Positions 56,093 through 64,000 of a stretch of 64,000 nt of DNA are shown here, piece after piece. The notes under the pieces were generated by a model, which was given only the letters and a program-made list of their open reading frames with translations, made no database searches and was not told where the DNA came from. Each line of letters starts with the position of its first letter. Position 1 is the first letter of the stretch. The position numbers and the translations under genes are program-made. The stretch is from Podarcis cretensis (Eukaryota), in assembly GCA_951804945.1 (NCBI GenBank), contig OX638155.1, positions 39,990,001-40,054,000 of the forward strand, in the 5' to 3' direction.

Positions 56093-56151
56093 TAGAGCAA
56101 TATATGTAAAAAGCTGTGTTCAGATGATCATATCTTGGTTTATTACATTTA

Positions 56152-57533
56152 CCGTATTTTTCGCCCTATAGGATGCACTTCTTCCCCTCCAAAAATGAAG
56201 GGGAAATGTGGGTGCGTCCTATGGGGCGAATACAGGCTTTCGCGGAAGCCCGGGGAGCGAGAGGCTCTCGCTCTCCAGGCTTCAGGAAGCTCTGTACAAC
56301 CCTCCGGAGCCCAGTGCCAAGCCGCGCCGACCTCCAGAGGGTCGTGGAGAGCTGCCTGCGCTCCCGGGGTCCGCGCAGCTTTGCGCGACCCTCTGGAGCC
56401 CGGCGCCAAGCTGCGCTGGCCTCCGGAGGGTTGCGCAGAGCTGCCTGCCCTCCCGGGGTCCGCGCAGCTCTGCGCGACCCTCCGGAGCCCGGCGCCAAGC
56501 CGCGCTGGCCTCCGGAGGGTTGCGCAGAGCTGCCTGCCCTCCCGGGGTCCGCGCAGCTGTGCGCATCGCTCCAGAGCCCAGCGCCAAGCACTCCCGGGCT
56601 CCACGCAGCTCTGCGCAACCCTCCGGAGCCCGGCGCCAAGCTGCGCTGGCCTCCGGAGGGTTGCGCAGAGCTGCCTGCCCTCCCGGGGTCCGCGCAGCTC
56701 TGCGCGACCCTCCGGAGCCCGGCGCCAAGCCGCGCTGGCCTCCGGAGGGTTGCGCAGAGCTGCCTGCCCTCCCGGGGTCCGCGCAGCTGTGCGCATCGCT
56801 CCAGAGCCCAGCGCCAAGCCGCGCCGGCCTCCGGAGGGTCGCGGAGAGCTGCCTGCCCTCCCGGGGTCCGCGCAGCTTAGCGCAACCCTCCGGAGCCCGG
56901 CGCCAAGCCGCGCTGGCCTCCGGAGGGTTGCGCAGAGATGCCTGCCCTCCCGGGGTCCGCGCAGCTTTGCGCAACCCTCCGGAGCCCGCGCCAAGCCACG
57001 CTGGCCTCCGGAGGGTCGCGCAGAGCTGCCTGCCCTCCCGGGGTCCGTGCAGCTTTGCGCGACCGTCCGGAGCCTGGCGCCAAGCCGCGCCGGCCTCTGG
57101 AGGGTCGCGGAGAGCTGCCTACCCTCCCGGGGTCTGCGCAGCTTTGCGCGACCCTCCGGAGCCCGGCGCCAAGCCGGCCTCTGGAGGGTCGCGGAGAGCT
57201 GCCTGCCCTCCCGGGGTCCGCGCAGCTTTGCGTGACCCTCCGGAGCCCGGCGCCAAGCCGTGCTGGCCTCCGCAGGGTTGCGCAGAGCTGCCTGCACTGG
57301 GAAGCCTCAGCGCGCCCGGGCTTCGCACAGCTGTCCGCAATCCTGGGGAGACCGGCGCGGCTCCCTAGGCTTGCGGATAGCAGGCTCTTCTGGGGGCTGG
57401 GGTCGGGGAAACTCGGGCTTCCCCTGCGCCAGCCCCGTGCCTGGGGGGGAAATAAATTTTTTTCTTTATTTCCTCCCCCAAAAAACTAGGTGCGTCCTAT
57501 AGGGCGGTGCGTCCTATGGGGCGAAAAATACGG
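56152..57533. mobile_element. Tc1/mariner-superfamily (Tc2/pogo-like) non-autonomous DNA transposon with internal GC-rich satellite
   Basis: TIRs CCGTATTTTTCGCCCTATAGGA ... TCCTATGGGGCGAAAAATACGG, with TA duplication on both sides. Confidence 0.9.
56286..57295. repeat. 89-bp CpG-rich tandem array (~12 units, one truncated); each unit is a 70-nt inverted repeat plus a 19-nt linker
   Basis: Unit starts at approximately 56286, 56375, 56464, 56553 (short), 56605, 56694, 56783, 56872, 56961, 57049, 57138 and 57222. Confidence 0.93.
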
Positions 57534-59839: not shown

Positions 59840-60739
<900 letters not shown>

Positions 60740-60801: not shown

Positions 60802-61257
60802 TGTAATGGTTCTAGGGGTTGCTTGTGCGTAAGCAGGTACCTATCTCCCCGGCTGGGTGCAAACACCTGGCTGGGTTGCCAAAGTGAACCTTTTTCTGTC
60901 CGGACAGCCACTCACCCATGGCTGACTCAATCCCTGGCAGAATCCGTGAGTGGGCGTTTCTTAAACTTCTTCCAGCAAAGAAGTTCTTTGACGCCTTGTC
61001 TCCGCCTACCCTCTCTGCGCGGAAGCCTTCTGCGCAGGGAGGGCGTGGGCAATGGAGGACTCCTACTCTCCCCGCTGGACCCAGGCAAGAAGTCATGAGG
61101 CCGCCTCGCCACTTCCACCACCTGCCCCCCTTCTCCACTGGTGGTACGCTGATTCTCTTCCCCAGAAAATGGGCTGCTCCTCCCGATACCTGGGCGCTCT
61201 CTGGAATCCCTCTGGCTTTTGCTCTCTCCCTCCAGTACTGATGGCAGTTCCCTGACA
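60802..61257 (-). repeat. 3' LTR of the gypsy element (456 bp, TGTCA...TTACA)
   Basis: TG...CA termini on the minus strand, directly preceded by a polypurine tract, with an abrupt GC-to-AT transition at 60801. Confidence 0.85.
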
Positions 61258-61271
61258 TCCACCCCCACCTC
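61258..61271 (-). promoter_or_regulatory. polypurine tract (PPT) GAGGTGGGGGTGGA
   Basis: Purine-rich run abutting the LTR's 5' TG. Confidence 0.8.
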
Positions 61272-61438
61272 AGGACCACCCTCACCCCTGGCACGATCTT
61301 CCGATACCTCCTCCTCGACTTCATCGACCTCATCTTCTGAGGATTCAAAACCGGCCTCCCATCCCCTCCAGCTGGTCGAGCCTCCCAGTTTGATTCTTCT
61401 CCCTCGGACACCTCCCCCTTCTCCTCCTCGGAGGCAGG

Positions 61439-63016
61439 AAACCCCACAAAGTCCCCTTCGTCGTCTGTGGTTCCGAATTCTTCCTCCCAGAATCTAGCTA
61501 GTGGTTTAGGTCTATCCGGGAATAAACTATGAAACTCTTCCACCAGATACCCGTCCATGATTGATTCCGCAGGGACCCAAGTGCTTTCCGACCTGGGTTC
61601 TCCCTCCCAGGCTACCAGGTACTCTACCTGGTGACCCCGCCACCTCGTATCGAGTATTTCCGTGGCTTCATTACAGAGTGCCCTCTCCTCTACCCGCGGA
61701 TGGGTGGTAACCCCTCCCTCCCTTCCTGGGAATTCCTGCCCCTCCCTGTACTGTGAGAGTAGGGACCTATGGAACACCGGATGTATCTTCATGCTATTGG
61801 GCAACTTGAGTTTGAACGCCACTGGGTTCACCTGCTGTATTACCTCAAAAGGCCCCAGTCACCTAGGCTACAACTTCTTGCACCCTCCCTTTAGGGGCAA
61901 CCCTTGGGACGACAACCACACCCGGTCTCCCACCCGTATGGCCTCCCCCTCCTGACGGTGCCTGCCTGCCTGCCTCTTGTAAACTTCCTTAGCCCTCTCC
62001 AAGTTCAGCCTGAGTTGCTGGTGTAAGGCCTCCATTTCTTCGGCAAATTGCTCGGCCGCAGGTACACTCCATCCTTCTTCCCCCCTCCCTGGGAAGGCCC
62101 TGGGGTGACACCCGTAATTGGCCATGAAAGGGCTCGATCCCGTGAACACGTGTTCAGCGTTGTTGTACGCAAATTCAGCCAAAGCCAATTTCTCTACCCA
62201 ATCGTTCTGCCTCTCGCTGACATAGCAGCGTAGGTACTGCTGGAGTATACCGTTCGCTCTTTCGGCCTGCCTGTTGGTTTCTGGGTGCCGTGCCATCGAG
62301 AAGCTCACCTCGACCTACAGCAAGCTCATGAGCCTCCGCCAGAACTGGGAAGTAAATTGTTTTCCGCGATCTGAGATTACCCTCATTGGGGTGCAAAGCT
62401 GCCTGAAAACGTGGTCCTCAAACAGCCTGGCTGTCTCCTCTGCCGACATTGCGTGCGAACATGCTACGAAATGGCACATTTTAGTCAGCAGATCGACCAC
62501 CATCATGACCGCTGTCTTCCCCCTTGACTTGGGCAGAGCTGTCATAAAATCAATGGACACCACCTCCCAGGGCCTTTCCGGTGTTGGTAAGGGTTCCAGT
62601 AACCCTGCGGGGGCGGTCCTTTCCCCCTTTGCCCTCTGGCACTGGTCGCACCCTCGTACATATTCTCGTACGTCCGCCCTCACCTTTGGCCACCAGAATT
62701 GCCTGGTAACTAGTAGCATGGTCTTGTGCTGTCCAAAGTGCCCAGCTGTTGGATTGTCATGGAGCTGCCTCAGTATTTTGCCCCTCAACGTCTCTCCTGG
62801 TACATACAGCGCCCCCTTGTAGTACAGTAGCCCTTCCTTTTCCGAAAACCCCCCATTGTCTCCCTTTCCACCTCTGAGCTCCCTGATTTTAGTCTGAGCA
62901 AACTCATCGTCTCGGGTGAGCCCTGCTAGCTCTCGTTTACCTACCAACGTTCCCCCACCCACCCACCGGTCCTCGGGGAACACGGGCCTGGCCTCCAGAG
63001 GCCCTTTCCCCTCCAT
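61439..63016 (-). pseudogene. gypsy integrase (HHCC, DDE core, GPF, chromodomain, acidic tail)
   Basis: Motifs LHDNPTAGHFG...CDQCQR, SIDF, ISDRG, QAERAN, LGPF, IHPVFHRSLL, EILDTRWRGHQVEYLVAWEG...STWVP. Confidence 0.95.
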
Positions 63017-63019
63017 GTA

Positions 63020-64000
63020 TTCCAGTTTTCTGGAGAGTGCATCCGCCCTAACATTTCCCCCCCGGCACGTATTGTATCTTGAAGAAAAACTTGGTGAACT
63101 CCTGGAACCATCTGATCTGTCTCTAGTTAAGCACTCGCGTGGTCCGCCAGTATTCCAAGTTCTTGTGGTCAGTTCGGACCTGGATCTTGTGCCGCGCCCC
63201 TATCAAGAGGTGTCTCCATTGACGAAATGCCAAGTAAATCGCAAGCAGTTCTCGGTCATACACTGTGTAGTTTTGCTCCGACTTACTCAGCTTCCGGGAG
63301 AAAAAGGCGCACGGTTTTCAGTTCTCCTTGGACCCGGGTTGCAACAATACTGCTCCAATGGCGCGGTCGGACGCATCTGTCTCCAGTCTCATGGGCTTCT
63401 CCGGATCCACGTGCAGGAGCTGCTCTTCCGAGGCGAACGCCTTCTTCAATTTCTCAAAGGATTGCTGCGCCTCCTCTGTCCATGTGAACTTCTTTTTACT
63501 ACTAAGACAATCCGTAATGGGTGCTGTCAAGTGGGCGAAGTTCCTTATGAACTTCCTGTAGAAGTTGCTGAAGCCTAGGAACCTCTGCACATCCTTTCGG
63601 TTTTTGGGGGCCTTCCATTCCAGCACTGCCTTCACCTTGCCTGGATCCATGGCCAGTCCCTTGTCTGACAACCTGTATCCTAGGAACTTGACCTCCCTAG
63701 CATGGAATTGGCATTTTTCCAGCTTGACCCACAACTGATACTTCTTCAATCTCTGTAGCACCTCCCGGACGTCCTTGACATGTTGCGCTTCATTCTCCGA
63801 ATATATTAAGACGTCATCCAAAAAGGCCATGCAATTCTTGTACAGCAGTGGCCCCAGCACATGGTGCATGAAGGATTGAAAGCAGGCGGACCCCGATTGT
63901 AATCCAAATGGCATAACTAAATACTCAAAAGCCCCCAGGTGGGTGAACATGGTCGTTTTCCATTCGTCCCCCTCCCGTATTCTAATCAGATTGTATGCCC
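63020..64000 (-). pseudogene. gypsy pol: reverse transcriptase and RNase H
   Basis: Motifs FEYLVMPFGL, AFLDDVLIYS, KCQF...[51 protein letters not shown]. Confidence 0.95.

What the first reader, a model, noticed from the sequence alone, without database searches (positions are those of the whole stretch)
61439..61492. Gypsy integrase tail carries a LEDGF/TND-interacting-type motif (FWEEEFGTTDDEGDFVGF), a possible host-tethering system
Seen: directly after the chromodomain and in frame with it, the tail reads ARFWEEEFGTTDDEGDFVGFPASEEE. Established: the integrase-binding motif/TND-interacting motif (IBM/TIM) of LEDGF/p75 partners such as JPO2/CDCA7L, IWS1, POGZ and KMT2A is a short helix ending in F, then an acidic CK2-phosphorylatable S/T linker, then FxGF. 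From memory, JPO2 reads ...IFNAPSDDEEFVGF and IWS1 reads ...IFGESGDEEEEEFTGF. TIMs bind TND domains of LEDGF, HRP2, TFIIS, ELOA, IWS1, MED26 and PPP1R10, and lentiviral integrase uses LEDGF to target gene bodies. The tail has all three parts, including T-x-x-D/E CK2 sites. Inference: this lizard chromovirus may mimic a TIM to direct integration towards Pol II elongation or H3K36me chromatin, converging on the lentiviral strategy. This copy's intronic position near an exon is compatible with that but is only one data point. I do not know of such a motif being described for Ty3/gypsy integrases.
Basis: partly seen in the sequence, partly recalled or inferred. Interest (0 to 1): 0.85.

Follow-up and report, generated by a model that had tools for sequence, protein, structure and literature searches.

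The report
LEDGF-type docking motif in lizard retrotransposon
A family of lizard gypsy retrotransposons carries, just after the integrase chromodomain, a conserved short peptide that looks like the docking motif host transcription factors use to bind LEDGF, so these elements may use it to choose where they insert; binding itself is untested.

Summary
On the minus strand, in frame with a Pfam chromodomain, the tail reads FWEEEFGTTDDEGDFVGF at 61439-61492.

It is not a chance match:
- The anchor residues (F, T, FxGF) are at least 90% conserved across 13 relatives that share only 42-80% identity. The rest of the tail averages 46%.
- The composite pattern occurs once or twice in 16 of the 20 clade proteins scanned; the other four are truncated or decayed there. 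It is absent from about 380,000 control residues of other chromoviruses.
- Better-preserved relatives, mostly Podarcis muralis ORFs, carry two tandem copies. In the window copy the second copy is frameshifted and lacks its FxGF.
- The motif-bearing elements form one clade (support 96). That clade has also lost the chromodomain's methyl-lysine aromatic cage.

The motif fits the published definition of a TND-interacting motif: a short helix with an aromatic anchor, an 8-9-residue acidic, CK2-type linker, and FxGF, all in a disordered tail.

Insertion bias could not be tested either.

My verdict is a real, conserved, clade-specific peptide motif (about 0.85) that probably mimics a TND-interacting motif (about 0.5). 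No paper describing this was found. The scan noted the same idea on two other copies in this genome (s1-837092, s1-837397). This particular copy is dead.

The parts
61439..61492 (-). Motif 1: FWEEEF (helix end) + GTTDDEGD (acidic, CK2-type linker) + FVGF
   Evidence: Translation. Anchors F119, T122, F128, G130 and F131 are at least 90% conserved in alignment A1.
61439..61450 (-). FxGF core (FVGF)
   Evidence: The x position varies among relatives (V/E/K/Q/R/H/L) while F, G and F are kept.
61475..61501 (-). LARFWEEEF: predicted short helix with conserved aromatic residues (F114, F119)
   Evidence: The AF2 model gives a helix at residues 113-116, at low confidence. F114 is kept in 11 of 13 and F119 in 12 of 12 sequences.
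61517..61666 (-). Integrase C-terminal chromodomain, lacking 2 of the 3 aromatic-cage residues
   Evidence: Pfam PF00385. AF2 pLDDT is 87-91. The alignment with canonical chromodomains shows N/H, W, E/A where they have Y/F, W, Y.
61745..61831 (-). End of the Tf2-1-like SH3 domain of integrase
   Evidence: Pfam PF24626, residues 1-29 of ORF 60812-61831.
61296..61364 (-). Remnant of motif 2 in another frame (GWEAGFESSEDEVDEVEEEVSED): helix and acidic linker kept, FxGF missing
   Evidence: BLASTP to P0001 shows an 11-residue gap exactly where P0001 has ..SSSFRGFPAS.
61411..61429 (-). 19-nt polypurine run on the element's sense strand, encoding SEEEKGE right after motif 1. It is a candidate polypurine tract.
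60927..61373 (-). Rest of the pol tail after the frameshift: acidic region, GVDVRE block, basic C-terminal block (60951-61034) and stop (60927-60929)
   Evidence: 47% identity to P0001 residues 323-474, E 1e-21, running to the last residue.
61868..63016 (-). Integrase in two pieces: zinc-binding H2C2 plus core at 62315-63016, C-terminal part at 61868-62308
   Evidence: Pfam PF17921 and PF00665; ORFs.
63318..63950 (-). Reverse transcriptase / RNase H piece; the element runs off the window end
   Evidence: Pfam PF00078 and PF17919.

Best explanation
The peptide is a functional short linear motif of the integrase tail of one clade of lizard chromoviruses. It is normally present as two tandem copies and imitates the TND-interacting motifs (TIM/IBM) of host transcription-elongation factors. 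Proposed mechanism (inferred): the short amphipathic helix (F/W...F) and the FxGF pair dock into the two hydrophobic pockets of a TFIIS-N-terminal-type domain. The most likely target is the integrase-binding domain of the H3K36me3 readers LEDGF/PSIP1 or HRP2/HDGFL2. The acidic linker, which carries CK2-type phosphorylation sites, contacts the basic patch between the pockets. This would tether the integration complex to transcribed chromatin and replace the methyl-lysine reading that the clade's chromodomain has lost. Shown here: the sequence, its clade-wide conservation, its duplication, its location in a disordered tail, its specificity to the clade and the loss of the cage. Inferred: the partner, the phosphorylation and the effect on integration sites. 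The window copy itself is an inactive relic.
For: Sequence and frame. Relatives carry the motif at the same position. Group A has RFWEEQF-GTTDDEED-FxGF plus a second copy, W-E-A-V-F-ESTDDDSSS-FRGF. Group B has DYFDDWLF-TPTLSAST-F[QRH]GF. The anchors are the only tail columns at least 90% conserved, averaging 0.95 against 0.46 for other tail columns and 0.74 for the chromodomain. The composite pattern is absent from about 380,000 control residues of other chromoviruses. Motif-bearing elements form one clade with SH-aLRT 96. The tail is disordered with a short helix at the right place. The features match the published definition: helix with an F/V/L/I anchor, 8-16-residue linker rich in D/E/G/S/T and phosphorylated by CK2, and FxGF, which is essential for LEDGF/HRP2 (PMC9987994). 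FxGF-LEDGF-domain docking is conserved from flies to humans (JIL-1 DFxGFDE with JASPer; PMC6877644). The aromatic cage is lost (cage residues per PMC3350952). Several host proteins also carry two or three such motifs in series.
Against: There are no binding data or models, because no TND sequence could be obtained. Group B's linker (TPTLSAST) has no acidic residue, although the review calls the acidic linker obligate. The linker length (8-9) is at the lower bound of the stated range. The helix prediction has low confidence (pLDDT about 54). Nearly all relatives come from one genus (Podarcis) plus two sequences of unknown host, so the conservation is among paralogous subfamilies rather than across a wide host range. 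Acidic-aromatic peptides bind many partners. The similarity to the JPO2 and IWS1 sequences rests on memory.
Confidence: 0.5

Rival explanations
1. The motif is a real, selected short linear motif with a different partner. It could be an acidic-aromatic activation-domain-like peptide that binds TFIIH p62, Mediator or CBP. It could be a histone-binding acidic/aromatic 'anchor' like those of histone chaperones. It could also be an intramolecular regulator of the integrase or chromodomain.
For: Conservation and clade specificity say nothing about the partner. Group B keeps F...T...FxGF but lacks the acidic linker expected of a TND-interacting motif. The tail is long and has other conserved blocks, GVDVRE and a basic C-terminal block, so it may act as a larger module.
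Against: The specific combination of an aromatic helix end, an 8-9-residue S/T-acidic linker and FxGF, found twice in tandem, is the signature given for LEDGF/HRP2 ligands. I know of no other reader of FxGF; that is from my own knowledge and was not searched exhaustively.
Confidence: 0.3
2. The conservation reflects nucleic-acid constraints rather than a protein function. Candidates are a polypurine tract, the start of the LTR, or other cis elements that overlap the end of pol.
For: A 19-nt polypurine run lies immediately after motif 1. The pol ORF seems to continue past it. A scan note on other copies proposes read-through into U3 (s1-836684).
Against: The conserved positions are scattered amino-acid anchors (F, T, F, G, F), while the x of FxGF and the linker vary. 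The motif occurs twice in different sequence contexts. Groups A and B differ in nearly every other tail residue. The polypurine run lies after the motif, not in it.
Confidence: 0.06
3. The motif is a chance resemblance in a low-complexity acidic tail and has no function.
For: FxGF alone occurs about once per 3,700-5,000 residues. The match was noticed post hoc. This copy is dead.
Against: The motif is positionally conserved across subfamilies that share only 42-80% identity, is duplicated, and is absent from all controls.
Confidence: 0.03

Closest known systems
Cellular TND-interacting motifs / IBD-binding motifs (JPO2/CDCA7L, IWS1, KMT2A, POGZ, ASK, MED1, Drosophila JIL-1)
   Same: The layout matches: a short helix with an aromatic or aliphatic anchor, an acidic S/T/G-rich linker with CK2 sites, and FxGF, all in a disordered region. 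The motifs often occur several in series (PMC9987994). JIL-1's DFxGF is echoed by DFVGF here (PMC6877644).
   Different: This motif is encoded by a retrotransposon integrase tail, not a host transcription factor. The linker is at the short end (8-9 residues). Group B's linker is not acidic. Binding has not been shown.
Lentiviral integrase-LEDGF/p75 tethering
   Same: The proposed outcome is the same: the integrase is tied to the H3K36me3 reader LEDGF, directing insertion into transcribed genes.
   Different: From established knowledge, HIV integrase binds the IBD through its folded catalytic-core dimer and N-terminal domain. Here the proposed contact is a disordered peptide that copies the host ligands' own motif. 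That would be convergence by a different interface.
Integrase C-terminal tethering peptides (MLV IN tail with the BET ET domain, Ty5 IN targeting domain with Sir4, Ty1 IN with Pol III AC40)
   Same: In each case a short peptide in the integrase C-terminal tail binds a chromatin or transcription factor and sets the target site (from my own knowledge; see also review PMC5053271, listed).
   Different: The motif and the presumed partner are different. None of these is an FxGF-type motif.
Group II (cage-less) chromodomains of plant chromoviruses
   Same: The first and third aromatic cage residues are lost and W45 is kept in group A (PMC3350952).
   Different: [quoted passage not shown] Here the pattern is in an animal element, and group B has lost W45 as well.

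Membership tests
TND-interacting motif (TIM / LEDGF IBD-binding motif) | FxGF pair (optional in general, essential for LEDGF/HRP2 ligands) | tested here: met
   FVGF at 61439-61450. F128, G130 and F131 are each kept in 12 of 13 relatives.
TND-interacting motif (TIM / LEDGF IBD-binding motif) | Acidic linker of 8-16 residues rich in D/E/G/S/T between the helix and FxGF | tested here: met
   The window has GTTDDEGD (8 residues, 6 of them D/E/S/T). Group A linkers are 8-9 residues. Caveat: group B has TPTLSAST, which is S/T-rich with no D/E.
TND-interacting motif (TIM / LEDGF IBD-binding motif) | Obligate short alpha-helix presenting F/V/L/I to the first pocket | tested here: inconclusive
   AF2 predicts a helix at residues 113-116 (RFWE), but pLDDT is about 54. 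The hydrophobic residues F114 and F119 are conserved.
TND-interacting motif (TIM / LEDGF IBD-binding motif) | Lies in an intrinsically disordered region | tested here: met
   Tail pLDDT is 43-54 with no secondary structure after residue 116. Residues 111-150 hold 15 D/E and 2 K/R.
TND-interacting motif (TIM / LEDGF IBD-binding motif) | CK2-type S/T-x-x-D/E sites in the linker, phosphorylation raising affinity | tested here: inconclusive
   Consensus sites are present (T121 with D124, T122 with E125), and T122 is kept in 12 of 12 sequences. Phosphorylation itself cannot be tested here. Group B's T lacks the acidic +3 residue.
TND-interacting motif (TIM / LEDGF IBD-binding motif) | Binds a TFIIS-N-terminal-type domain (LEDGF, HRP2, TFIIS, ELOA, IWS1, MED26, PPP1R10) | not testable with these tools
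Chromovirus (Ty3/gypsy with a chromodomain at the integrase C-terminus) | RT-RNase H-integrase order with a chromodomain after the integrase SH3-like domain | tested here: met
   Pfam hits in order on the minus strand. The window copy clusters with chromoviral pol proteins.
Group I (classical) chromoviral chromodomain | Aromatic cage Y24, W45, Y48 | tested here: not met
   The window and group A have N/H, W, E/A. Group B has N, R/K, T/F. Canonical chromoviruses in the same alignment have Y/F, W, Y (definition from PMC3350952).

The most novel reading that the evidence does not exclude
A lizard chromovirus clade gave up histone-mark reading by its chromodomain, whose cage is lost. Instead it acquired tandem copies of the host's own LEDGF/HRP2-docking motif in the integrase tail, and so steers integration into H3K36me3-marked, transcribed gene bodies. 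This would be convergent with lentiviruses but would work by ligand mimicry rather than through a folded-domain interface. It would be the first LEDGF/TND-tethered LTR retrotransposon.
Probability: 0.4. Interest if true: 0.85.

Novelty: new variant of a known kind. Interest (0 to 1): 0.72.

Why it matters
How LTR retrotransposons pick their insertion sites is known for only a few elements (Ty1, Ty3, Ty5, Tf1, MAGGY). For vertebrate chromoviruses it is assumed to run through chromodomain reading of heterochromatin.

A clade that lost the methyl-lysine cage and carries conserved tandem LEDGF-type motifs would show a switch of targeting strategy within one family. It would also be a second, independent route by which retroelements hijack the LEDGF/TND network, after lentiviruses.

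It would add a natural parasitic ligand to the TND interactome. POGZ, a transposase-derived host protein, is already a ligand. The hypothesis can be tested directly with peptides of about 20 residues and with insertion-site statistics in published Podarcis genomes.

Tried and rejected
Searches and tools that gave nothing:
- phmmer of the 36-residue tail against PDB chains found no hit at E up to 10. This is uninformative for so short a motif.
- The ESM Atlas look-alike search of the P0001 tail gave scores below 0.8 and no lead.
- A search with the P0003 tail found only P0003 itself.
- The viral-contig scan found nothing.
- The metagenome-contig scan returned 80 generic chromoviruses whose matches mostly stop at or near the end of the chromodomain. 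I used them only as controls.
No dN/dS was possible.

Literature:
- The primary papers on these motifs (Tesina 2015, Sharma 2018, Cermakova 2021) are not held.
- A text search for literal motif strings found nothing relevant.
- Searches for a chromovirus or retrotransposon link to LEDGF motifs found only general reviews.

Steps not taken:
- Pfam finds no family in the tail or in the host exon.
The majority line that align_proteins prints by itself was not used.

Readings rejected: chance match, and pure nucleotide-level constraint (see the rival explanations).

Full report
**Observation.** The element lies on the minus strand. ORF 60812-61831 holds the end of a Tf2-1-type SH3 domain and a chromodomain (PF00385, E 2.3e-9). 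The copy is a relic. Two stops lie just before the SH3 part, pol is split into several ORFs, the element runs off the window end, and no second copy or LTR pair lies in the window.

After a frameshift near 61365, another frame continues with GWEAGFESSEDEVDEVEEEVSED, a GVDVRE block, and a basic C-terminal block ending ...LLCWKKFKKRPLTDSARD-stop at 60927. This second frame aligns to residues 323-474 of relative P0001 (47% identity, E 1e-21), right to its last residue. There is an 11-residue gap exactly where P0001 has its second ...SSSFRGFPAS.

**Relatives.** An exhaustive HMMER search with the SH3-chromodomain-tail piece and two word-indexed searches found the nearest kin. Nearly all are Podarcis muralis ORFs in UniRef. 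One is from P. lilfordi, and two are of unknown host (P0001 from Logan, P0003 from ENA). They fall into two groups.
- Group A contains the window, P0002, P0159, P0160, P0161, P0005, P0001 and P0003. Directly after the chromodomain it has R-F-W-E-E-Q-F, then G-T-T-D-D-E-E-D, then F-x-G-F. About 35 residues later it has a second copy of the type W-E-A-V-F, E-S-T-D-D-D-S-S-S, F-R-G-F.
- Group B contains P0006 and P0151-P0158. Its 90%-identity clusters have up to 24 members, and its ORFs reach 1498 residues. At the same position it has D-Y-F-D-D-W-L-F, T-P-T-L-S-A-S-T, F-[Q/R/H]-G-F, followed by S-S-D-E-E.
- Individual decayed copies have lost parts: P0159 has FEEF in motif 1, P0012 and P0007 are frameshifted, and the window lacks the FxGF of motif 2.

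**Conservation.** Alignment A1 holds 13 sequences that are 42-78% identical to the window piece. In the tail, the only columns conserved at 90% or more are F119, T122, F128, G130 and F131. These are the helix-end F, one linker T and the FxGF. Their mean conservation is 0.95, against 0.46 for the other 38 tail columns and 0.74 for the chromodomain. F114 is kept in 11 of 13. The x of FxGF varies freely, which argues for selection at the protein level.

**Specificity.** I scanned for the composite F-(8-10 residues with at least 4 D/E/S/T)-FxGF.
- It occurs once or twice in 16 of the 20 clade proteins scanned. The four without it are truncated or decayed there.
- It occurs 0 times in 66,799 residues of the 162 other chromodomain or chromovirus proteins retrieved.
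- It occurs 0 times in 313,222 residues translated from 80 chromovirus loci in metagenomes.
- It occurs once in the six-frame window, at the finding itself.

Most other vertebrate chromoviruses among the hits have basic tails (RPAPRGRGRPPRRR...) instead. On a tree of the SH3-chromodomain region (146 rows), groups A and B together form one side of a branch with SH-aLRT 96. A single origin is therefore compatible with the data. The tree has few columns and is unrooted.

**Chromodomain.** I aligned the clade with canonical chromoviral and host chromodomains. Those have Y/F, W and Y at the three cage positions. Group A has N/H, W and E/A, and group B has N, R/K and T/F. Y24, W45 and Y48 form the methyl-lysine pocket, and the cage-less 'group II' type has been reported only from plants (PMC3350952). 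The motif-bearing clade has therefore probably lost canonical H3K9me reading. The fold itself is predicted with confidence (pLDDT 87-91).

**Fit to the known motif class.** The review PMC9987994 defines TND-interacting motifs by three parts:
- an obligate short helix that anchors F/V/L/I in one pocket;
- an acidic 8-16-residue linker rich in D/E, G and S/T, which CK2 phosphorylates to raise affinity;
- an optional FxGF that fills a second pocket and is essential for all known LEDGF and HRP2 ligands.

Several host ligands carry two or three such motifs in series. The window motif has all three parts: a linker of 8 residues, T-x-x-D/E sites, and FxGF preceded by D as in JIL-1's DFxGFDE (PMC6877644). 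It sits in a tail that AF2 leaves disordered apart from a short low-confidence helix at RFWE. The FxGF-LEDGF-domain interaction is described as conserved across animals, so a lizard partner is plausible.

**Weak points.**
- No binding test was possible.
- Group B's linker has no acidic residues.
- The linker is at the short limit of the stated range.
- The taxon sample is narrow.
- The comparison with the JPO2 and IWS1 sequences is from memory only.

**Mechanism proposed.** This part is inferred. The integrase tail docks by ligand mimicry on the TND/IBD of LEDGF or HRP2, or on another TND of the elongation machinery. Two motifs would give avidity, and CK2 phosphorylation would tune affinity. 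This would tether the integration complex to transcribed, H3K36me3-marked chromatin in place of the lost chromodomain reading. I put about 0.85 on a selected functional peptide motif, about 0.5 on TND binding, and about 0.4 on LEDGF/HRP2-directed targeting. The rivals are another partner for an acidic-aromatic peptide (0.3), overlapping cis-element constraints (0.06) and chance (0.03).

**Novelty.** Full-text searches found no paper linking chromoviruses or other LTR retrotransposons to LEDGF-type motifs. Tethering peptides in integrase tails are a known principle (MLV-BET, Ty5-Sir4, Ty1-AC40; from my own knowledge), and so are cellular motifs of this class. I therefore file this as a new variant of a known kind. 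Two first-reader notes of this scan describe tandem FxGF motifs on other copies in the same genome (s1-837092, s1-837397). They agree with what I see in the relatives but are not independent evidence.

**Limits of the session.** I therefore have no DNA of relatives, no host identification for P0001 and P0003, and no read-level evidence.

Noticed in passing
window 61517-61666 (-), and relatives P0001, P0160, P0161, P0006, P0155, P0157: The chromodomain of this animal chromovirus clade lacks the aromatic cage. Group A keeps only W45 and group B keeps none. This pattern has been described only for plant 'group II' chromodomains.
   Followed up: partly
window 60927-61432 (-): The pol ORF continues about 160 codons past a 19-nt polypurine run (61411-61429) to a conserved basic C-terminal block (..LLCWKKFKKRP..), which P0001 and P0003 share. 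It may read through the polypurine tract into the LTR, as scan note s1-836684 proposes for other copies. No LTR pair lies in the window to check this.
   Followed up: partly
window 60041-60736 (-): An ORF on the same strand, about 190 bp beyond the pol stop, looks like a coding exon of a CCDC102A-like coiled-coil gene (Atlas score 0.91; no Pfam hit). The element fragment lies directly upstream of it. Whether that is an intron or the 5' region is unknown.
   Followed up: partly
window 56135-57500, both strands: A GC-rich tandem array gives long repetitive ORFs on both strands (repeats of ..LRRVAQSCLPSRGPRS..). Another first-reader note flags it as a hairpin array (s1-837768).
   Followed up: no
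P0004, P0173, P0181: Gene models fuse chromoviral SH3/chromodomain pieces to host domains: a trypsin-like protein, TM9SF2 in Rhineura floridana, and a vomeronasal type-2 receptor in Podarcis muralis. These may be annotation artefacts or exonised fragments.
   Followed up: no
many hits (e.g. P0019, P0024, P0048, P0078): Many other chromoviruses among the hits share a quite different conserved tail after the chromodomain: a basic RPAPRGRGRPPRRR stretch, often ending in ..SPEY or ..SPEF. Its function is unknown to me.
   Followed up: no
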